From the NCBI RefSeq assembly GCF_035594765.1, contig NC_085841.1, forward strand, positions 115,739,574 to 115,803,573: DNA of 64,000 bases, written 5' to 3'. Numbering within the stretch: position 1 is the first letter of the stretch; every line of letters begins with the position of its first letter. Under the pieces are notes generated by a model. The model did no database searches, was not told the DNA's origin, and saw only the letters and a list, made by a program, of their open reading frames with translations. This DNA comes from Anolis carolinensis. Its lineage: Eukaryota. The position numbers and the translations under genes were made by a program. Positions 42,036-58,589 of the stretch are shown here, piece by piece.

Positions 42036-44083
42036 CCCCAAATATCCAGAATTGCAAAAAAAAATATATATCTACATGGTTGATTGAAATAGTGACACCT
42101 TGTAAATAAACTTTTGTGTCATGCACAAACTTATTTAAAAATATTATGTATAAATGAACTTCAGGCTAAGGTGTACATGAAGCATACATGAATTTTATTT
42201 TAGATTTGTACATATATGGAAATACAGGTATTCCAAAATCCAAAAAAATCCCAAACACTTCTGGTGCCCAGCATTTCAGATAAATGATACTCAGTTAACA
42301 GTGTTAGATTAATGTGGGATCCTACAGACCTTACTCAGCAACAACTGACAGCTGAAGACATAAACACTATCAAGCATAAATATGGATGAATAGGCAAAGA
42401 TTTTCATACATTCATTCACTTGTAAAAGAAATAGTTGGTGCATGTCTGGGCTGATGGAAGTATACGTATACCCCCAAGGAGGACGTTCCTGTGATCACAA
42501 TTACAAGTACATTTATATACTTATTTTATGTTATGTGGCTTTGTATTCTGCTTTTTCTTAACAACCCTGGCATCTAATGATTTTATCCAATTTGAACATA
42601 TGCATGGTTTTAACTACTTTGAATATATAGTCTAAAATATTTGGATCATAAATTATATTTTTATATACATTTTAATATTTTTCTTAAACACAGATTTTTA
42701 TTTTTACCTCTCTGAAATTTTTGCCTGGGAAATGAATCAATAATCAATCAATTGATTGATTATGTTAATAGATTCTCACTGGGCAGAAGAAAGGAAAAAC
42801 ACAGGAGGGCTGTGAACAGAAGATTAGCTCATTTGGTCCTCTGGCAAACGTCCACGAATGAGTCAGTTTGATTACACAGTAAATATCTTGTCCAGAAGCA
42901 CCCTTTCATAGGAAGCTGCTTTGCAAGACAAACAGGGAATAAGCAAAGCAATACAGTCCAATGATTTAAGCTGTCTAGTTCAGTATTGTTGAGAATGATT
43001 AACAGTCATTTTGTCAACTAGAGTTTCAATTTTTCTTCATCTTACAGGAAGAACCCAACAACTGAAAATGGAAAAGATCTCAACGATTGAAACAGATACA
43101 TCACTGTGCTGCACCACCTTCCTTTGCGCACTCAAAGTAAATGACACACCAGCTGGGAGGATTGTTTACACAATTGTGGTTCTTTGCATGTACTCTTTCT
43201 TTATGAATTCTCATATTTCTTTCCTTGGTGCATCATGAAAAGATACACACACCAAAAGCAGCATTGGGAAAACTATGAAAAGCAGTAGAGAAATATTTTA
43301 TTCACTTATAGAAATAAATTAGAAGTAGGCTCTGAGATGGATACTTTTTATTATTAGCCCTGTACATTTGTAACATGTGTATTCATATTTATTTATTGGT
43401 TTAGGGGCCAATTCCTTTTAATGGAGCATTTTGTTTTCTGACACCCGTACGTCACGGGAAGATATGAGTCTAGGCACCAAACAAGGGATGGAGATGGGCC
43501 CGAGAACTGATTATGCCCTGACATACAGAGCAGTATCCACATAATTTGTCCATCCCCTGCAGTGCAGCTGCACTGTAGTTTGGCACTACTTTAATTGCCA
43601 TGGCAATGCTATGGAATCATGGGAACTGTAGTCTTGCAAGATGCTTGACATTCTTTGCCACAGAGTGCTGGTACCTTGCCAAACTACGACTTCCAGGATT
43701 CCACAGTCTTAGAGAGTTTTGTCCATTCTGGAAGAAAACTACTCTTTCCACCATGGGGTTGCTTCTGGCTTTTTTGAACGCCGGGAAGAGAAATGGCAGC
43801 AGTGCTCAGGGCAACTGTCCTGCTGTGTTGGCCTTGGTGCTTTCCCTAATCAGAGAAATGATTCTCAAGTTATTCACAGATCATCTGTAATTTTGCCCCC
43901 AAAACCTACATTGACATATACATGAGACTGACTTATACATGAGTATATGCAGTAAATTAAACATGTAAACAAAACATTCAATGTTAAATCCTCCTTTGTA
44001 GTCCTCCTCCTCCTTCTGTCTCCTTTTTTTTACCACAGCCACCCACACACATCTGCTATGATGGAATAGCAACTCCATGATTT

Positions 44084-44862
44084 GTTTGCTTGGTTGCATA
44101 CTGCAAGTTGCTTCTGGTGTGAAAGAATCAGCCATCTACAAAGACATTGCTCAGGGGATTCCTGGATGTGTTACTATCCTGCGGGGAAGCTTCTCTCATG
44201 TCCACAGTGGATGTGGCTCTTAATGAGACATACCACATTATCACAGGATGCCTATGCCCAACACTGCTTGAGAAGTTATACTATTTGGCCGGTATTGCAT
44301 CACCTGATATTCGCTGGGAAGTAGCAGCTAGCAATGAAAGGACAAATGCATTGACATCTCCGGCCCATCCTCTGTTTGGATATCAGCCAGCAAAATCAAG
44401 AAATAGCTTTCTAAGATCTACAGAGATACTAGCAGGAACACCTCAGCAAGTGAGAGTCCAAAAGTGGCAGGCTAAAACTTGGAACCTCAAACCATGGCTG
44501 ATACCAGATGAGAAACTCCCTCCTAGGTACACAGAAGACTGGGTGACTTTGAAGGCACTGAAGAGATTGCGCTCTGGTATCATGAGATGCAGAGCTAGTC
44601 TTAAGAAATAGGGCTACAAAGTGGAATCCACAACATGCGAGTGTGTAGAAGGGCAAACCACAGACCACCTACTACAATGCAGTCTGAGCTCTGCCACATG
44701 CACAATGGAGGACCTTCTCACCGTGACACCAGAGGCACTTGAAGTGGCCAGCTTTTGGTCAAAGGAAATCTAGCATAATGCCAAGTTTTTAACTTGGTTT
44801 GTGGTGTTTTATCTATTATAGCTGTGTTCTCAATTTGCTTCTCACACAATAAATAAATAAGG
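44084..44862 (+). mobile_element. Vingi (Ingi/I-group) LINE: inverted 5' end plus sense 3' end
   Basis: TVDVALNETYHIITGCLCPTLLEKLYYLAGIASPDIR; C-terminal Cys/His motif; (AAAT)n tail; flanking TCCATGATTT repeat. Confidence 0.75.
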
Positions 44863-44986
44863 TCCATGATTTTTTAATGCTTGTACTAAGATTCCTCTGT
44901 GTGGAAGACCCTCCAAAGAAACTTCATTGCTGACTAGGAGCTGGAGGCCAAGCCACACCCACTGTCTTCTGTGCCACAGAGCCTTT

Positions 44987-45570
44987 CGAAATGCAAGATA
45001 CTCCACTTAGGCAGAAAAAATGAAATGCAAAGATCCAGAATAGGGGGGGGGGGGGCTTGGCTTGACAGCAGTACGGGTGGAAAGGATCTTGGAGTCCTCG
45101 TGGACAACAAGTTAAACATGAGCCAACAATGTGATGCAGTGGCTAAAAAAGCCTGGAGAACAAGCCCTATGAGGAGCAGCTTAAAGAGCTGGGAATGTTT
45201 AGCCTGCAGAAAAGAAGGCTGAGAGGAGACATGAAGAGGCCCATGTATAAATATGTGAGGGGATGTCATAGGGAGGAGGGAGCAAGCTTGTTTTCTGCTG
45301 CCCCGGAGACTAGGACACGGAACAATGGCTTTAAACTACAGAAAAGGAGATTCCACCTGAACATCAGGAAGAACTTCCTCACTGTGAGAGCTGTTCTGTA
45401 GAGGCACTCTCTGCCCCAGAGTGTGGTGGAGGTTCCTTCTTTGAAGGCTTTTAAGCAGAGGCTGGATGGCCATCTGTCAGGGGTGCTTTGAATGTGTTTT
45501 TCCTGCTCATTGGCAGGGGGTTGGACTTAATGGCCCATGAGGTCTCTTCCAACTCTAGGATTCTATGATT
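44987..45570 (+). mobile_element. CR1 LINE 3' fragment with internal deletion
   Basis: [39 protein letters not shown]; ATTCTATGATTC tail. Confidence 0.9.
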
Positions 45571-46854
45571 CCCCTTTGCTGGAAGAACTTCCAAACAATG
45601 TTCCAGGGCTGGAAAGCCCAAGCATATTTGTTCTGCTATTTAAAATACAGAAGTTCAGCAGCAATGTGTCTGTTGCTTGGGACTTTTGCTTTGAGTTTCT
45701 GTTTTCTCTGACACTCTGGAGAACAGGAGACATGTGGTGTGCCTCATTTGAATAGTATGCTAAAAGAAATGATCAGGTTACACCTGTTTAGGTTACACTG
45801 CCTAGGGAACCGTTGGAGTCACTTTCCGAGACCTGAAGCTGTAAAACTCCCTTTCTGAGAAGACAAAACATTACTTTTTAATGATACCAGAAACCCGCTG
45901 TGCTCTCTGACAACCACTTGCTGTTATACAGGTACGTCTGTTTCCCACTTAATCTTAAACAACATGTAAATGCCTTTTTTATTAAACAGCATGACAGTGA
46001 AATTGCCTTTTGGATTCTAAGTACTTCAAATTCAACAAAAATAGCCTTGTTAGAAAATGAATAAATTGTCAGGAAATAGCAGTGAAGAGGGTTGGCTGAA
46101 GAAAGAGGCAAAAGCCTCGCCATACTGGAGGGTAAAATCCACCTGACTTTGATAGTTGGTTGATGTGGGACTTTCAGATGAATCTCCAACCCAACATTAT
46201 CTGCTACAATATTTTTCCTATGACAGTTACTTTAAAACTTTTAAAATATTCATGCCACAGTAACATTTGTTCATCTGTTATTTTTAGCATCCTCACATAT
46301 CCCACCAAAAGAGCGTTTGGAGTGAACTAGATAACATGGAGAAGGTGCAACAATGGTAATATATATTTCTGGGTGTAAAAATGTGCACATTTGTAAAAGG
46401 TGCATGTATTGAGGAGGATAGCCAACTGGATTTAGTATGTCCACAATTGTCACCCAGTGGTTCACTCAAAGAGCTTGTCAAAATTAGCTTTTTGGACCAC
46501 AAGTCTCAACATCCCACAGTCAGAAGATTCTGAAAGTCAAGAGTCCACATAAAGGAATTTCTAAAGTTGACCACTAATAAACCATATCTATATTGCCAAT
46601 AACTTTAGGATGATTCACTATGTCAGTCATTAGATGGAGGAACAGAAGGAAAGTGAAAGAAATGTAAGTAGAAATAAAAAGTATAGAGACAGAAAGATGA
46701 AAGAGAGAGAAAAAGGAGTGCAAGTGTTAAAATGAGATCGAAGATAAATGGTTTGAAATGGGTTCCATGTTTAATACCCTGGGAAGGTATCTTTTTTGCC
46801 TTTCATTGCAAGTTAGAAGGGAACACTATGAAGGTACAGATTCTCTAATGAATA

Positions 46855-47740
46855 GTGGATTGCTGTGAGATTTCCGGGCTGTAGGGTCATGTTACAGAAG
46901 CATTCTCTCCTGAAATTTCACCCACATCTATGGCAGGTATCCTCAGAGGTTGTAAGGTATATTGGAAACTAAGCAAGGGAGATTTCTATATCTGTGGAAG
47001 GTCCAGGGTGGGAGAAAGAACTCTTGTCTGTTTGAGGCAAGTGGGAATGTTGTAATTAATCACATTGATTAACATTTAATGGTCTTGCAGCTCCAGGCCT
47101 GGCTAATTCCTGCCTGGGGGGATCCTTTGTTGGGAGTTATTAGCTGGCCCTGATTGTTTCATGTCTGGAATTCCCCTGTTTTCAGAGTGTTGTTCTTTAT
47201 TGTCCTGATTTTAGAATTTTTTAATACTGGTAGCCAGATTTTATTCATTTTCATGGTTTCCTCCTTTCTGTTGAAATTGTCCACATGCTTGTGGATTTCA
47301 GTGGCTTCTCTGTGACATGGTGGTTGTTAGAGTGGTCCAGTATTTCTGTGTTCTCAAATAACATCTGTGTCCAGCTTGGTCCATCAAGTGCTCTGCTATG
47401 GCTGATTTCTCTAGTTGATTTAGTCTGCAGTGCCTTTCATGTTCCTTGGTTCGTATCTGGGCAAGGCTGCGTTTTGTGGTCCCTATGTAGACTTGCCCAC
47501 AGCTGCATGGTATACGGTAGACTCCTCCAAAGCTGAGAGGATCCCTCTTGTTCTTTGCTAAATGTAGCATTTGTTGGATTTTCTCAGTGGGTCTGTAGAT
47601 AGTTTGTAGGTTGTGTTTCTTTATCAGCTTGCCTATGCGGTCAGTGGTTCCCTTGATGTATGGTAAGAACACTTTTCCTCTGGGTGGATCTTTGTTTTTA
47701 CTCTCCTGGCTTACTCTTGGCCTTGCAGATCTAATGAATA
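46855..47740 (-). mobile_element. Penelope-like element 3' part with GIY-YIG endonuclease
   Basis: LPYIKGTTDRIGK...GVYRIPCSCGQVYIGTTKR...KEHER; frameshifted; runs into the assembly gap. Confidence 0.9.
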
Positions 47741-47759
47741 TATTGTAGTAGGAGAAGCT

Positions 47760-47926
47760 NNNNNNNNNNNNNNNNNNNNNNNNNNNNNNNNNNNNNNNNN
47801 NNNNNNNNNNNNNNNNNNNNNNNNNNNNNNNNNNNNNNNNNNNNNNNNNNNNNNNNNNNNNNNNNNNNNNNNNNNNNNNNNNNNNNNNNNNNNNNNNNNN
47901 NNNNNNNNNNNNNNNNNNNNNNNNNN
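47760..47926. other. Assembly gap (N run)
   Basis: 167 N. Confidence 1.
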
Positions 47927-48860
47927 GTTTAGACTCCTTCAAACAAATGGGAATTCACAGAGCTTGTTAAAGATAATGGGGGTAAAAGTTGCCATTTGTG
48001 TCAGACAAGATTTGCATTAGAGCTGTGCTATTACCAAGAGTTTTCAATACATTTTCAAGGAGGGCACGTTATGAACGGTTGGTTGCTACAACACTGCTGA
48101 GTATAATTGAAGCTGGAAAAATATCCCCTCTGAAAACTCTCATTCAGTGAAAACCTGGCATGGAGTGGGTGAAGAGCTGGGTATACGTGGGCAAGGTTTA
48201 TAGGGAGAAACATTACACAGACATTTCTAGGAAGGTAGCTATGTTAGTCTGCCATTGCAAAAACAACAGCCTAAAGCTAGAGATGAAGAGATTTCATTTG
48301 GGCATAGGTTTTTTTTAATGAATTCAGTCCATTTTGTCATATGCAATCTGATGAAGTGTGCTGGCGTTCATGAGAGCATATGCCTAATAAGATCCCATAA
48401 TCAGAATTCTTACACATTTCCCCATTTTAGAAACTGCAGCTCAGTGTATTTTTAGCTTTCTTTAAAAGGGCACTTTGTGTCCCTGTTGCACTTCCCCAAG
48501 CCTTTCAACAGCATGGCAGCATAGCACACAGAGCAGCAGCCACTCCCTTGATTGTAAAGTTGTTATTTTATGCGCCTCATTACACTAGAGCATGAATCCA
48601 CTTTAAATCTGGTTTCTGCCTCCTGCAGAATTCTGGGGTTTGTAGTTTGGTGAAGCCCAGAACCTGTTTCGCTGAGCCGTTAAAAGCCCCCTCCCTAAAG
48701 TGGATTTAAAGTGGATCCAAGCTCTAATGTGATGAGGTCCTAAGACATAAAAAGACTTACGATGTGCATGTCCAGGTATACTCAATGGCAAACTTCTCTA
48801 TCCATAAAGTGTAATGCAGCCTTTTCACCAATCCCTGCTAAATTTACACTTCTAACGTGA

Positions 48861-49005
48861 TCATAGAATCATAGAATAGTAGAGTTGGAAGAGACCTCAT
48901 GGGTCATCCAGGCCAACCCTCTGGCAAGAAGCAGGAAATCGCATTCAAAGCACCCCCGACAGATGGCCATCCAGCCTCTGCATAAAAGCCTCCAAAGAAG
49001 GAGAT
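48861..49005 (-). mobile_element. CR1 3' UTR fragment
   Basis: ATCATAGAATCATAGAAT tail. Confidence 0.85.
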
Positions 49006-49011
49006 GACACT

Positions 49012-49276
49012 TTTTGTGTGTGTGTCAGGAGCAACTTGAGAAACTGCAAGTTGCTTCTGGTGTGAGAGGATTGGCCATCTGCAAGGACGTTGTCCAGGGG
49101 GATGCCCGGATGTTTAATGTTTTACCATCCTGTGGAAGGCTTCTTTCGTGTCCCTCTATGGGAAGCTGGAACTGACAGACGGGAGCTCACCCCACTCCCC
49201 GGATGCAAACCGCCGACCTTTCAGTCAGCAGTCCTGCCGGCACAAGGGTTTAGCTCATTGCGCCACCGGGGGCTCC
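49012..49276 (-). mobile_element. tRNA-headed Vingi-module SINE, full length
   Basis: Head GGAGCCCCCGGTGGCGCAATG; Vingi module; tail CTCCTGACAC(AC)n AAAA. Confidence 0.75.
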
Positions 49277-51129
49277 ACTTGATGGCACTGACAAAAGCCC
49301 CTAAGAAGGTTTGTTGCTCAGTTTTGCCCCACACGCTGATATTTTCTAATTTTCCTCTTATTTTAGTTTTCAAATAAATAAATAAATAAATAAATTCTAG
49401 ACTGGCCTGGACAACAGGGAACAAGTTTCTCCTTTATATTTCCAAGCACAATGGAAGTAATACAGAATCCCTTCCAGGCACCAAACTGGGCCAGGTTTCA
49501 GCAGGTGGAAGAGGGCAAATGGCCACGTTTGTGCATGGCTTTGGCATTTTAATGTGTTTTAAGGGGACAGGGAAGGAAGTAATCTGAAAATTGCACTAAA
49601 AAATTATATGGGCTTTGATAAGACTGGTGTGGGCTATCCCAGGCCCTGCAAACTACAGCTTGAAATAGGCTTTTAAAGAGAACAATGTCATAGCATTTAT
49701 TATTACTAGTATTTTTAGACTCTGAGCTTAATGATCTTAACTATCTCCCCTCTTCAAATGGTATTATATATTTCTAACTGGATATGAAAGTGCAGTAATC
49801 TTATCCACTGCTTTTTAAACTGTGAGTAACAACCTCAAATGGAGTCCCTTTAACTCAGTGTTGGGGTCACCAAAGCCCATTAACAGTAAAAGGTTTCTGA
49901 ATCCCACCCAGTTACACGAGTTTACAGTGGACTCTGCAGAAAATGCTTTCGCTGTACTCCTCAAAAAGGAAAATTAGCCTGCCTAGCAAATCTTGCAAAT
50001 TCCGATTTATTATCAGTAACTGTTTGACTTCTATACCTATTTTATATACCTGTATACCTTGGGTGACATTTAAAAACTTGGGCCAAAAGGAATTGCGAGT
50101 GCAAAAAGATTAAGAAACCCTGATCTAGTCTGGCTATGTTTTGGGAATCTTTCTAGTCATTCTGCCAAATGCAACCCAGCATCATAGGCTTTCCAGTAAG
50201 GATTTAGGGGATTCTGGGAGTTGTATCCAAAGAGCAACTCTTCTGAGATCTGTTCCTTATATGAAACAAGGGGACAATTCTGAATTGGGACATGTGTCCA
50301 TGGAACTGGCAACTGCTTGTTGCTGTCTGGCAAATTTTATTTATTTATTTATTTATTTGTGGTATTTATATACCGCCCTTCTCAACCTCAAAGGGAACTC
50401 AGGGCAGTTCACTCTGTTTGATGTAAAACACGAATGTCTGCTCTAGAAGTAGAATGACTAGGTTCTAAGATAGGATTATTTCCAGGAATCCAATCAACCT
50501 TGAACAAAAATGTAAGGCACATCCCTGTGACCAGAGTGAGCCAATGTCTTTTTTCATGACACCACGTTCTGCCCTGAAGAGCAGTTCCTCAATCCGCACT
50601 TGCCACTTTAGGGAGAAGTCCTGAGATGTTGGAAGGAAGAGGTGAAAATGTTGGCACTTTGAATTTTGGTCAGTTTTGCTGAGGCTTTAAGACAAGTATG
50701 TCCTACATGCTTTTTAAAAGTATGCATAACTAGGAGAGCCTGTATTACTTGTAATGTTTAACCTATTGAGTAACCATAAGAAACACGGTTCTTAAGCTTG
50801 ATTGCATTCTTAAGCTGCTCTTGGTTGGTTAGGTATCCATTCTCCAGTTCACATTGTTTATCGTGTAATAAGTTTCTTTTGTATTCAGGCAAGGGTGCAC
50901 TTGTGCTTTGGGTTTTATGTCTCTCGCTATTGCAGAGTCATTTTTTTTAATGCTTGGTCGCTCTTTATTATTTATATCACTATGTTTTGATCAAGGAGAT
51001 GACTGTACTGTGTGTCACTGGCCAGGACTGCCTGTAATGGCATGATGACATGAGTTACTAGTACAGGTTGTGTATCTCTTATCCAAAATGCTTGGGACCA
51101 GAAGTGGTTTTTTTTTTTAATATTTTTTG

Positions 51130-51265
51130 TGTGTGTCAGGAGTGATATGAGAAACTGCAAGTCACTTCTGGAGTGAGAGAATTGGCCGTCTGCAAGGACG
51201 TTGCCCAGGGGATGCCCAGATGTTTTGATGTTTTACCATCCTTGTGGGAGGCTTCTCTCATGTCC
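51130..51265 (-). mobile_element. Headless Vingi 5'+3' module (non-autonomous Vingi or truncated SINE)
   Basis: Begins at GGACATGAGAGAAGCC; nested in a Tigger-like MITE. Confidence 0.7.
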
Positions 51266-51749
51266 TATAATAATAATTGAAAAATGTGTATATGCATAGG
51301 GAGACATTGTATGATGCAGATGGGACCCCAGTCTAATCATGAAATGCATTTATGTTTCATATACACTTTACACACATAGTCTAAATATAGTTTTATACAA
51401 TGTATTTTTAAAATAATGTGTCCATGGAACCAACTGAAAGCAAAGGTGACACTACTTTAACTGCCATGGCTTGATGCTATGGAATCATGAGAGTTTTAGT
51501 TTGGTGAGGCACCAGCACTCTTTGGCAGAGAAGGCTAAAGACCTTATAAAATGACAAGGGTGTCAAACCGCATGTATTCTACAGTGTAGATGCACCCAGG
51601 AAGGAAGTAACAAACCATCTTTGAACTATTCTTGCCAGAAGAAATGTGACAGATTCCTTTAAGGTCACCAAAAGTTAGAAATTACTTGAATACACACCAC
51701 AAGAATAAGTGATTCAGTGCTTCAAACTAAATGGAAATTTTGAGCAGAG

Positions 51750-57401: not shown

Positions 57402-57791
57402 TAAGATGACTGGAAGTGCTAAACAGAAAGTTCTGTTATTTTCAGTTTACGAATAGGAAGGCTGATCCATTTTTTAAAAAGCTCAATTTCTCTATTTCTC
57501 TATTGAACTGGATTATCTGGCAGTGTAGACTCATGTAATTCAGTTCAAAGCAGGTAATGTGGATTATCTGCTTTGATAATCTGGATTATATGGCAGTGTA
57601 GAAGAGGCCTCAGAATTAGGTACAAAGGGTATTAACAAGGTAATCCACTTATGGTAAGATTGATTTGTTCCTTTTTGATCCAGTGAGTAATCTAATTCAG
57701 TCTGGATGTTCCCTATTATGTTTTTAAAAGGACATTCTCATGTATCTTATTTGTTTTGTTACAGCCTCTTGTCTCTCCAGAAGTAGAAGAA

Positions 57792-58589
57792 ATGAGCTGG
57801 GGATTTCTCCGTGATATTCTAAGTGGGGTGAATAAATATTCAACTGGAATCGGCAGAATTTGGCTGGCTATTGTGTTCATATTCCGCCTCCTTGTCTACG
57901 TTGTGGCTGCGGAACACGTCTGGAAGGACGAGCAGAAGGAGTTTGAGTGTAACATTAAGCAACCCGGCTGCGAAAATGTTTGTTTTGATCACTTCTTCCC
58001 TGTTTCCCAAGTCAGGCTCTGGGCCTTGCAACTGATTATGGTCTCCACCCCATCCCTTCTTGTCGTTCTCCACGTTGCTTATCGTGAAAATAGGGAAAAG
58101 AGACACAGAACAAAGCTCTACAAGGACCCTGGGAGTATGGATGGAGGATTGCTATGCACCTATCTAATCAGCCTCCTTTCCAAAACAGGATTTGAAATTG
58201 GTTTCCTCTTTTTGTTTTACAAGCTCTATGGCGGATTCAACGTCCCCCGCCTTGTGAAATGTAACATGAGTCCGTGTCCCAACACTGTTGACTGTTACAT
58301 ATCCAAGCCCACTGAGAAGAAAGTCTTCCTCTATATTGTGGTGGTGACTTCTTGCTTATGCATAGTCTTAAATGTCATTGAATTCAGCTATTTGATTTTC
58401 AAATATTCCATCAAATGTTGTTTCAAGAATTATATCAAGAAGGCTCAGGACTCCAAAAGTGAGCACAAGAAGTTGAATTCTACAGATCACAATGGGACAG
58501 TCTTGTATTTTGGGAGTGATTTGGACACAGTCTTTGATATCCATGGAACAGAAGTCAATACCCAGCCCAGCAGCCAACGTGAAGAATAA
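57792..58589 (+). CDS. GJB7: Gap junction beta-7 connexin (Cx25 orthologue), 265 aa
   Basis: [24 protein letters not shown]...; EL1 C-x6-C-x3-C and EL2 C-x4-C-x5-C; single coding exon preceded by splice acceptors (57765, 57780); position next to SMIM8 fits known synteny. Confidence 0.92.

What the first reader, a model, noticed from the sequence alone, without database searches (positions are those of the whole stretch)
51175..51265. HDV-like ribozyme fold with an atypical L3 hairpin in a Vingi 5' module that is also embedded in a tRNA-headed SINE
Seen: the minus-strand consensus of five copies (20155-20250, 32408-32494, 44120-44203, 49064-49156, 51175-51265) reads (N)GGGGAC-AT-GAGAGAA-GCC-TCCCAC[AAGGATGGTAAAACATC..CATCC]G-GGC-GTCCCCT-GG-GCAACGTCCTTGCAGACGG-CCAA-TTCTCTC. 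This maps in order onto the HDV nested double pseudoknot: P1 NGGGGAC/GTCCCCT, P2 GAGAGAA/TTCTCTC, P3 GCC/GGC, P1.1 CC/GG, a P4 hairpin and a J4/2 cytosine. Known: Ingi/L1Tc-clade and R2 retroelements carry 5' HDV-like ribozymes, and L3 is normally a short 7-8 nt loop. Here L3 carries an extra GGATG/CATCC stem-loop. The two headless copies (51265, 44203) start within ~3 nt of the predicted cleavage site, whereas tRNA-headed copies keep upstream sequence and the 20117 copy has C at the cleavage-site pair. Inference: one module yields self-processed non-autonomous elements when active and Pol III SINEs when disabled. Each single copy carries some mismatches.
Basis: partly seen in the sequence, partly recalled or inferred. 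Interest (0 to 1): 0.8.

Follow-up and report, generated by a model that had tools for sequence, protein, structure and literature searches.

The report
Delta-like ribozyme fold inside lizard SINE
This 91-base stretch is a decayed copy of the front end of a Vingi-type jumping gene that folds like the hepatitis delta self-cutting RNA with an extra hairpin beside the active site, and here the same module also forms the body of a small SINE, apparently in a disarmed form.

Summary
Five minus-strand copies lie at the stated places: three behind a Pol III-type head, two headless. The fold is not a chance match. A model built only from six 5' ends of APE+RT LINEs of other organisms finds exactly these five copies in 64 kb (E 1e-20 to 5e-11). 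Across 20 sequences all six helices (P1, P1.1, P2, P3, P4, L3 hairpin) are 93% paired, against about 40% when slid, and 17 of 28 pairs show double changes. Short-L3 relatives pass Rfam's CPEB3-ribozyme cut-off; independent insertions diverge in flank at the first base of P1.

In 32393-32496 and 44105-44208 the P3 3' strand is degenerate.

The three SINE-type copies, this one included, lack the L3 C-G that all 15 outside sequences keep; loss of that G abolished detectable self-cleavage in a tested Nasonia R2 junction (PMC3774820). So the SINE version looks disarmed. The "active gives headless, disabled gives SINE" switch is not shown: the headless copy here carries the same L3 as the headed ones.

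Cleavage is untested. I found no paper describing a Vingi ribozyme. The scan has already reported the LINE form on other DNA of this genome (s1-539924, s1-555023, s1-565319, s1-563769).

The parts
51262..51265 (-). Remnant (GGAC) of the P1 5' strand. The first 2-3 bases of P1, and so the cleavage site itself, are missing in this copy.
51253..51259 (-). P2 5' strand GAGAGAA
   Evidence: 7/7 paired with 51175-51181
51250..51252 (-). P3 5' strand GCC
51242..51249 (-). 5' part of L3, UCCCACAA. CC at 51247-51248 is the P1.1 5' strand. This copy lacks the C-G kept by all outside sequences.
   Evidence: PMC3774820
51218..51241 (-). Hairpin inserted in L3: GGAUG / CAUCU with a 14-base loop that holds an 8-base tandem duplication relative to copies 32 and 44.
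   Evidence: hairpin helix 98% paired, 2 of 5 pairs with double changes
51214..51216 (-). P3 3' strand GGC (preceded by the conserved G at 51217)
51207..51213 (-). P1 3' strand AUCCCCU
51201..51206 (-). GG (P1.1 3' strand) followed by GCAA (J1.1/4)
   Evidence: same letters in L003, L004, L093 and L094 at these alignment columns
51187..51200 (-). P4 hairpin CGUC-CUUGCA-GACG
   Evidence: all four P4 pairs show double changes across families
51182..51186 (-). J4/2 GCCAA. The first C (51185) is the candidate catalytic cytosine.
   Evidence: G-C-N-A/G-A in 17 of 20 sequences
51175..51181 (-). P2 3' strand UUCUCUC
   Evidence: (at 49069 the genome-wide letter restores UUCUCUC in copy 49)
51118..51174 (-). 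The rest of the headless SINE-type element. It consists of the post-ribozyme segment (CCAGAAGUGACUUG), which pairs with the LINE-derived 3' module (CAUAUCACUCCUG), and then a CA/A-rich tail.
20141..20372 (-). Headed SINE copy: Pol III-type head (about 20262-20372) plus module 20141-20252.
49048..49272 (-). Headed SINE copy: head plus module 49048-49158.
32393..32625 (-). Headed copy with the short-loop (LINE-type) module 32393-32496. L3 reads UCCCAGCA; the P3 3' strand is degenerate.
44105..44208 (-). Headless LINE-type module with L3 UCCCCGCA, which keeps the C-G. It runs on into a 5' UTR-like stretch and abuts, inverted, a LINE 3' end.
44207..44862 (+). 3' end of a LINE ORF (one in-frame stop at 44609-44611) and its 3' UTR. 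The ORF piece is 62% identical to full-length APE+RT protein P0002. The last ~30 bases are homologous to the SINE tail.

Best explanation
The stretch is a dead copy, slightly truncated at its 5' end, of a bipartite retroelement module. The first ~90 bases of a Vingi-type (APE+RT, no RNase H) LINE RNA fold as an HDV/CPEB3-type double-pseudoknot ribozyme with an extra hairpin near the 3' side of L3.

In the LINE, the ribozyme most likely cuts co-transcriptionally just 5' of the first G of P1. That would define the RNA's 5' end whatever promoter made the transcript. The bases right after the ribozyme pair with the element's 3' end.

In this genome the 5' module and the last ~30 bases of the LINE were joined behind a Pol III-type head to make a SINE. 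The SINE keeps every helix of the fold and the 5'-3' pairing, probably because the LINE's reverse transcriptase needs them or because they protect the RNA. Its L3 has lost the C-G that all relatives keep, which should cripple cleavage and so let the head stay attached.

Shown: homology, fold conservation and covariation, element starts at P1, and the bipartite anatomy. Inferred: self-cleavage, disarming in the SINE, and the role of the fold in the SINE.
For: - Five copies are present.
- Model R2, built only from six non-window LINE 5' ends, hits just these five in 64 kb at E 1e-20 to 5e-11.
- Full-length relatives carry the module directly upstream of an APE+RT ORF.
- On 20 sequences, 93.4% of cells are paired against 39-48% when slid, and 17 of 28 pairs have double changes. 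P1 and P1.1 were not in the model and also covary.
- Outside contigs are perfect in all helices.
- Independent insertions L006, L007 and L009 diverge upstream exactly at P1. Contig L092 begins at the first base of P1; L001 and L094 have one base before it and L010 starts one G into it.
- Short-L3 relatives pass Rfam's gathering score for the CPEB3 ribozyme: 59, 55.6 and 43.3 bits against a cut-off of 35.
- The L3 C-G is invariant in 15 outside sequences and absent in copies 51, 20 and 49. Loss of that G gave no detectable cleavage in the Nasonia R2 RNA (PMC3774820).
- The SINE tail is homologous to the LINE 3' end.
- 5'-3' pairing is seen in L093, L094, L003, L001, L004 and the SINE.
- The SINE2-1_ACar / Vingi-2_ACar relation is published (PMC5786205).
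Against: - No cleavage assay or RNA 5'-end data exist. Only contigs, not raw RNA reads, were on hand.
- Rfam gives no HDV-family hit for the window copies or for the hairpin-type relatives.
- All five window copies are decayed: P1 4-7 of 7, and P3 and P1.1 broken in two.
- The 'disarmed' reading rests on three related SINE copies and could be a founder mutation without selection. The other headed copy (32) still has the L3 G.
- The alignment was fitted to four of the six helices.
- The outside contigs are short assemblies from unnamed organisms.
- The name Vingi could not be checked against Repbase.
Confidence: 0.8

Rival explanations
1. The fold is conserved as a structural or protein-binding 5' element of the LINE RNA (reverse transcriptase recognition, exonuclease protection, translation start) and does not cut itself. 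The likeness to HDV ribozymes is in architecture only.
For: The SINE keeps all helices although its L3 lacks the catalytic-site G, so something other than cleavage can maintain the fold. The module is tied to a 5'-3' pairing. There are no Rfam HDV hits for hairpin types. A large insert sits next to the active site.
Against: Positions that matter only for catalysis are kept in the outside families: the L3 U..C-G in all 15 and a J4/2 cytosine followed by NAA or NGA in all. Elements start exactly at the first base of P1. Short-L3 sister elements score as CPEB3-type ribozymes above Rfam's curated cut-off.
Confidence: 0.12
2. The SINE-embedded ribozyme is still active, fully or weakly. Headless copies such as 51159-51270 are retrotransposed products of self-cleaved SINE transcripts.
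For: The headless copy 51 has the SINE-type L3, loop duplication and tail, and begins 2-3 bases from the predicted cut. PMC3774820 notes that the same L3 substitution does not completely eliminate cleavage in HDV itself.
Against: Only one such copy is in the window, and it starts inside P1, not at its first base. No target-site duplication could be found to fix its ends. Ordinary 5' truncation, or descent from a headless bipartite LINE derivative, explains it equally well. The L3 C-G is missing.
Confidence: 0.15
3. Chance resemblance: a SINE body that happens to fit a hand-picked HDV topology.
For: A loosened HDV descriptor (6 of 7 pairs, L3 up to 45 bases, no P4 rule) hits about 27 places in the two strands of this window and only one of the five copies. 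Topology alone is therefore cheap.
Against: Covariation across families in all six helices. An independent model finds only these five copies. The module sits at the 5' end of LINE ORFs in many organisms.
Confidence: 0.02

Closest known systems
HDV-like self-cleaving ribozymes (HDV genomic/antigenomic, mammalian CPEB3; Rfam RF00094, RF00622, RF02682)
   Same: The order of strands is the same: P1, P2, P3, L3, P3', P1', P1.1, P4, J4/2, P2'. Also shared: a 7-bp P1 closed by G-U, a 3-bp G+C-rich P3, CC/GG P1.1, L3 starting U-C-C..C-G, GGGCAAC after P1, and G-C-N-A-A before P2'. Short-L3 sister elements pass the CPEB3 model's gathering score.
   Different: A 5-7 bp hairpin with a 6-31 base loop is inserted near the 3' side of L3, where known members have a 7-8 base loop. 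Rfam models do not detect these variants. Cleavage is untested.
L1Tc / NARTc Pr77 ribozyme (L1TcRz) of the Ingi clade in trypanosomatids (PMC3383444, PMC4035085)
   Same: An HDV-like ribozyme sits at base 1 of a LINE and is shared with a short non-autonomous partner made of the LINE's 5' and 3' parts. Ingi is reported as the sister clade of Vingi (PMC5786205).
   Different: The host (vertebrates, insects, other animals) and the sequence differ. The L3 hairpin is new. Here the module also sits downstream of a Pol III-type head, where cleavage would be harmful.
R2 retrotransposon 5' ribozyme (PMC3774820)
   Same: 5' processing of a co-transcript by an HDV-like fold, with the same invariant L3 G, whose loss abolished detectable self-cleavage in the tested Nasonia RNA.
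   Different: R2 is an rDNA-specific RLE element and its variable inserts lie in J1/2 and P4. Here the element is APE-type and dispersed, and the insert is in L3.
SINE2-1_ACar / SINE2-1B_ACar and Vingi-2_ACar (Kojima et al. 2011; Kojima 2018, PMC5786205)
   Same: The published architecture is a tRNA-type head followed by a middle part like the Vingi 5' end and a tail like the Vingi 3' end. This matches copies 20, 49 and 32.
   Different: Those papers do not describe a ribozyme in Vingi. [quoted passage not shown] I could not compare with the Repbase consensus sequences.

Membership tests
HDV-like ribozyme | Nested double pseudoknot with P1, P1.1, P2, P3 and P4 in the canonical strand order, supported by covariation | tested here: met
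   93.4% of cells paired against 39-48% when slid; 17 of 28 pairs with double changes; every helix varies. One search gives per-sequence counts.
HDV-like ribozyme | Catalytic cytosine in J4/2 just before the P2 3' strand | tested here: met
   G-C-N-A/G-A in all five window copies and 12 of the 15 outside sequences (17 of 20 rows); the other three read UACAA or ACUAA and still carry a C. Position 51185 in this copy. The catalytic role itself is not tested.
HDV-like ribozyme | Conserved L3 G (reverse wobble with the first L3 U) in the active site | tested here: not met
   For this copy and the two other SINE-type copies, L3 reads UCCCACAA or UUCCACA. The feature is met in copy 44 (UCCCCGCA) and in all 15 outside sequences.
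HDV-like ribozyme | Short L3 of 7-8 bases | tested here: not met
   L3 carries a hairpin here and in six outside families (L003, L004, L007, L018, L093, L094). Sister families have 7 bases.
HDV-like ribozyme | Match to a curated Rfam HDV-family model | tested here: not met
   There is no hit for the window at the gathering score or at E up to 10. Short-L3 relatives L015, L028 and L023 do pass RF00622.
HDV-like ribozyme | Site-specific, divalent-ion-dependent self-cleavage 5' of P1 | not testable with these tools
   Only indirect evidence: independent insertions and contigs begin at the first base of P1.
Vingi-clade LINE 5' module | Sits at the 5' end of a single APE+RT ORF without an RNase H domain | tested here: met
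   Met for relatives. In the window only a C-terminal ORF piece lies next to copy 44.
Vingi-clade LINE 5' module | Assignment to the Vingi clade by Repbase consensus or RT phylogeny with named references | not testable with these tools
   No named Vingi reference was on hand. The assignment rests on PMC5786205 and on an Anolis UniRef relative, P0223.
tRNA-derived SINE (SINE2) | Head recognisable as tRNA-derived | tested here: inconclusive
   ARAGORN finds none and Rfam gives no tRNA hit. A-box and B-box-like motifs are visible.
tRNA-derived SINE (SINE2) | 3' tail shared with the partner LINE | tested here: met
   the SINE tail aligns with the last ~30 bases of the LINE 3' end at 44830-44862.

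The most novel reading that the evidence does not exclude
The SINE keeps the whole ribozyme fold but is disarmed by a small L3 change, and residual or conditional cleavage turns Pol III SINE transcripts into headless RNAs that can still be copied. One RNA module would then switch between SINE and headless non-autonomous element. The L3 hairpin, absent from all described HDV-like ribozymes, would be the handle (protein or 3'-end contact) that tunes cutting.
Probability: 0.15. Interest if true: 0.8.

Novelty: new variant of a known kind. Interest (0 to 1): 0.62.

Why it matters
HDV-like ribozymes are known at the 5' ends of R2, R4, RTE, LOA-type and Ingi elements. I found no report for Vingi, and none of a helix inserted in L3, the loop that builds the active site. 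If it cleaves, it widens what the HDV fold tolerates.

It would also explain how promoter-less Vingi copies are expressed from read-through transcripts. It gives a concrete case of the conflict Kojima (2018) raised: a SINE that borrows a LINE 5' end must silence its ribozyme.

There is a practical side. An anole Vingi element, with its native 5' and 3' UTRs, is being developed as a gene-insertion tool (PMC13708176). A self-cleaving 5' UTR and a 5'-3' pairing would bear on how such RNAs are designed.

Tried and rejected
- **Rfam on the window.** The gathering-score search and small-stretch searches at E up to 10 gave no HDV-family or tRNA hit. A 12-bit U6atac-like match over GAGAGAAG..ACAAGGAUGG (E 0.5) is taken as noise.
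- **Single-sequence MFE folds.** z-scores of -0.3 to -2.2. These are uninformative because pseudoknots are not modelled, and they show a competing CAAGGAUG/CGUCCUUG pairing.
- **Loosened hand-written HDV descriptor.** About 27 clusters on the two strands, and only one of the five copies passes. Topology alone was rejected as evidence.
- **Strict descriptor on fetched loci.** It found 10 loci and missed decayed ones.
- **Read laying on 44000-49400.** This was meant to give the genome-wide consensus and 5' ends, but other abundant repeats swamped it. Only one informative row came out: position 49069.
- **Target-site duplications.** None were convincing, so exact insert ends stay open to within 1-3 bases.
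- **Supplement of PMC5786205, and papers PMC3308841 and PMC3002237.** Not held.
- **Tree of N-terminal ORF parts.** Hairpin-type and short-L3 elements are interleaved (3 changes; a single origin is not excluded). Three rows were read with frameshifts and are unreliable.
- **ORF start after copy 44.** Not verified; there is no likeness to relatives' N-termini.

Full report
**What is there.** Reading the minus strand at 51000-51500 and at the four other places shows the same ~110-base module. blastn, an nhmmer profile and two covariance models each find exactly five copies in the 64 kb, all on the minus strand:
- 51159-51270
- 20141-20252
- 49048-49158
- 32393-32496
- 44105-44208

Copies 20, 49 and 32 are preceded by a ~110-base head with A-box and B-box-like motifs. 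ARAGORN and Rfam do not call this head a tRNA. Copies 51 and 44 have no head and begin at GGAC and GTGGAC. The finding's coordinates 51175-51265 run exactly from that GGAC to the last base of the proposed P2 3' strand.

**Two subtypes.** The alignment (A1) separates the copies into two groups. Copies 51, 20 and 49 have a 14-base hairpin loop that contains an 8-base tandem duplication, and they have GGC before the P1 3' strand. Copies 32 and 44 have a 6-base loop and read GAU or GGA there. GGCG holds a CpG, so decay is a plausible cause, but with one copy each this stays open.

**Is the HDV-like fold more than a pattern picked by eye?** Topology alone is weak evidence. A loosened descriptor hits about 27 places on the two strands of this window and only one of the five copies. 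Rfam gives no HDV-family hit. I therefore looked for relatives.

- The LINE ORF fragment next to copy 44 (44207-44608, no Pfam hit) led through the exhaustive protein search to P0002, a 984-residue APE+RT protein without RNase H.
- A word search with the N-terminal part of P0002 gave more than 100 full-length relatives from insects, sea urchins, fish, amphioxus and Anolis.
- Their contigs and 80 metagenome loci supplied 5' UTRs.
- Directly upstream of the ORF, several families carry a sequence plainly homologous to the window module (A4).
- These families have different P1, P2, P4 and hairpin sequences that stay complementary. For example, P1 is GGGGUAC/GUACCCU, GGGGUGC/GCACCCU or GGGGAAC/GUUCCCU, and the hairpin is GAUUGC/GCAAUC, GACUGUG/CACAGUC or GAAUGU/ACAUUC.
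- Other families have the same core with an ordinary 7-base L3 (U-N-C-N-C-G-Y).

**Formal tests.** Model R1 contains only the nested helices P2, P3, hairpin and P4. It finds the motif upstream of the ORF in 25 of the loci searched. On the 20-sequence alignment A6, with the full pseudoknot written in:
- 93.4% of cells form pairs, against 39-48% when partners are slid by 1-3 columns.
- 17 of 28 pairs show changes on both sides.
- No shuffle reaches the observed covariation score.
- P1 and P1.1 were not part of the model, so the alignment is not fitted to them. They covary as well: two P1 pairs show four and five pair types, and one P1.1 pair changes from C-G to U-A in three sequences.
- The L3 hairpin is 98% paired, with double changes in two of five pairs among 11 sequences.

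As an independent membership test I built model R2 from six non-window sequences only. In the window it finds exactly the five copies, at E 1e-20 to 5e-11, and nothing else.

The short-L3 sister elements score above Rfam's gathering cut-off on the CPEB3 ribozyme model, with 59, 55.6 and 43.3 bits against 35. Two more come near the F. prausnitzii HDV model. This ties the whole group to the curated HDV-like family.

**Where the elements begin.** In the P0173 family, three insertions with unrelated upstream DNA (L006/L008, L007, L009) diverge within one base of the first G of P1. Contig L092 starts exactly at the first base of P1, L001 and L094 start one base before it, and L010 starts one G into it. 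L093 shows the same start 21 bases into its contig. That is what a 5' end made by cleavage just before P1 would give. It is indirect evidence: no RNA ends could be read, because only contigs were on hand.

**State of the window copies.**

| Sequences | P1 | P2 | P3 | P1.1 | Hairpin | P4 |
|---|---|---|---|---|---|---|
| Hairpin-type outside contigs (L003: P4 3/4) | 7/7 | 7/7 | 3/3 | 2/2 | 5/5 | 4/4 |
| Copy 51 (first 2-3 bases missing; one CpG-type change) | 4/7 | 7/7 | 3/3 | 2/2 | 5/5 | 4/4 |
| Copy 20 | 6/7 | 5/7 | 3/3 | 2/2 | 5/5 | 4/4 |
| Copy 49 | 5/7 | 5/7 | 3/3 | 2/2 | 5/5 | 4/4 |

Copies 32 and 44 have P3 2/3 and P1.1 1/2. All five keep G-C-N-A/G-A before the P2 3' strand.

The telling difference is in L3. 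All 15 outside sequences read U-N-C-N-C-G. Copy 44 reads UCCCCGCA and copy 32 reads UCCCAGCA. The three SINE-type copies read UCCCACAA or UUCCACA, with no G. Eickbush and colleagues found that a G-to-A change at this L3 position gave no detectable self-cleavage of a Nasonia R2 RNA. A sow-bug R2 lacking the G was also inactive, although the change does not fully kill HDV itself (PMC3774820). The SINE-type module therefore looks disarmed while keeping every helix. This rests on three related copies and may be a founder mutation. An earlier first-reader note of this scan (s1-539931) says the same.

**Anatomy of the SINE.** Alignment A8 shows three things:
- The SINE-type copies and copy 44 share the module up to ...ACUUGCAGU.
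- Copy 44 then continues as a LINE-type 5' UTR.
- The SINE continues with a ~30-base tail homologous to the 3' end of the LINE fragment at 44830-44862.

The bases just after the ribozyme pair with that tail: GAAGCGACUUG with CAAGUCGCU in the SINE consensus. The same 5'-3' pairing, with different letters, is found between the post-ribozyme segment and the 3' UTR of L093, L094, L003, L001 and L004. An earlier follow-up (s1-565319) reported this, and I confirm it in part. The SINE is thus a head, plus the ribozyme fold, plus a panhandle made local by loss of the ORF. This agrees with the published description of SINE2-1_ACar as head plus Vingi-2_ACar 5' and 3' parts (PMC5786205).

The headless copy 51 has the SINE-type L3, the SINE-type loop duplication and the SINE tail. 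It is a SINE-type element without a head, not an active variant. It starts 2-3 bases inside P1, and no target-site duplication fixes its ends. Three routes remain open and cannot be separated with one copy:
- residual cleavage of a SINE transcript;
- ordinary 5' truncation;
- descent from a headless bipartite LINE derivative.

Copy 44 is a LINE-type 5' end lying inverted against a LINE 3' end. This fits the twin-priming reading of note s1-546004. Its junction places the template's 5' end within a base or two of the start of P1. The C at the first P1 position of copy 20 is not shared by copies 32 (A) and 49 (G).

[quoted passage not shown] A 2026 review of gene-insertion tools describes the anole Vingi-1 5' UTR as retained in driver and donor RNAs, without mentioning a ribozyme. 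Full-text searches for Vingi with ribozyme, for L3 insertions, and for HDV-like ribozymes in non-LTR elements found no description. From memory, Ruminski et al. 2011 name R2, R4, R6, SART, Baggins and RTE; that paper was not held. I therefore rate this as a new variant of a known kind. Four earlier follow-ups of this scan reached the same view of the LINE form on other DNA of this genome. What this window adds is the SINE context, the L3 difference, and my independent test.

**Limits.**
- Cleavage is untested.
- The clade name was not checked against Repbase.
- The outside contigs come from unnamed samples.
- E-values of the home-made models are rough.
- Only five decayed copies were available for the lizard itself.

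Noticed in passing
L028:994-1077, L015:315-425, L023:5-84: The short-L3 5' ribozymes of Vingi-like LINEs from metagenome contigs pass Rfam's gathering score for the mammalian CPEB3 ribozyme. In L028 even the freely variable P1 and P2 letters nearly equal the CPEB3 consensus (about 45 of the first 48 positions). Human DNA holds old Vingi traces (X12_LINE, PMC5753468). Lead: the CPEB3 intron ribozyme may descend from a Vingi-type LINE 5' end. I found no paper saying so.
   Followed up: partly
L093, L094, L003, L001, L004; window 51118-51174 (-), 44085-44122 (-) with 44830-44845 (+): The 10-14 bases right after the ribozyme are complementary to the element's 3' UTR end, with different letters in different families. 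This is a 5'-3' panhandle, and in the SINE it becomes a local hairpin.
   Followed up: partly
window 44028-44862: The LINE-type 5' module and about 90 bases of 5' UTR lie inverted against the last ~650 bases of a LINE in direct orientation, with a T8 run at the outer end. This fits twin priming with a ~2.3 kb internal loss, and it places the template RNA's 5' end within 1-2 bases of P1.
   Followed up: partly
window 51218-51241 (-) versus 32440-32460 (-): The SINE-type hairpin loop differs from the LINE-type one by an 8-base tandem duplication (AACACAUC twice), which gives two alternative 3' strands for the hairpin.
   Followed up: no
window 57756-58589 (+): An intact 277-residue ORF with a full connexin domain (Pfam E 7e-83): a single-exon gap-junction gene of the host.
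   Followed up: no
window 45086-45628, 46896-47800, 48887-49067: These stretches attract 10 to 100 times more contigs than the Vingi parts in all four runs laid, so they belong to far more abundant repeat families of this genome.
   Followed up: no
L001:1-85, L091:1-62: The protein-wise closest relatives of the window's LINE fragment carry a different version of the ribozyme: a 7-base L3 (UGCCCGU), G-C/C-G P1.1 and a long P4. Model R1 missed it. The ribozyme module seems to be exchanged or remodelled faster than the ORF.
   Followed up: partly
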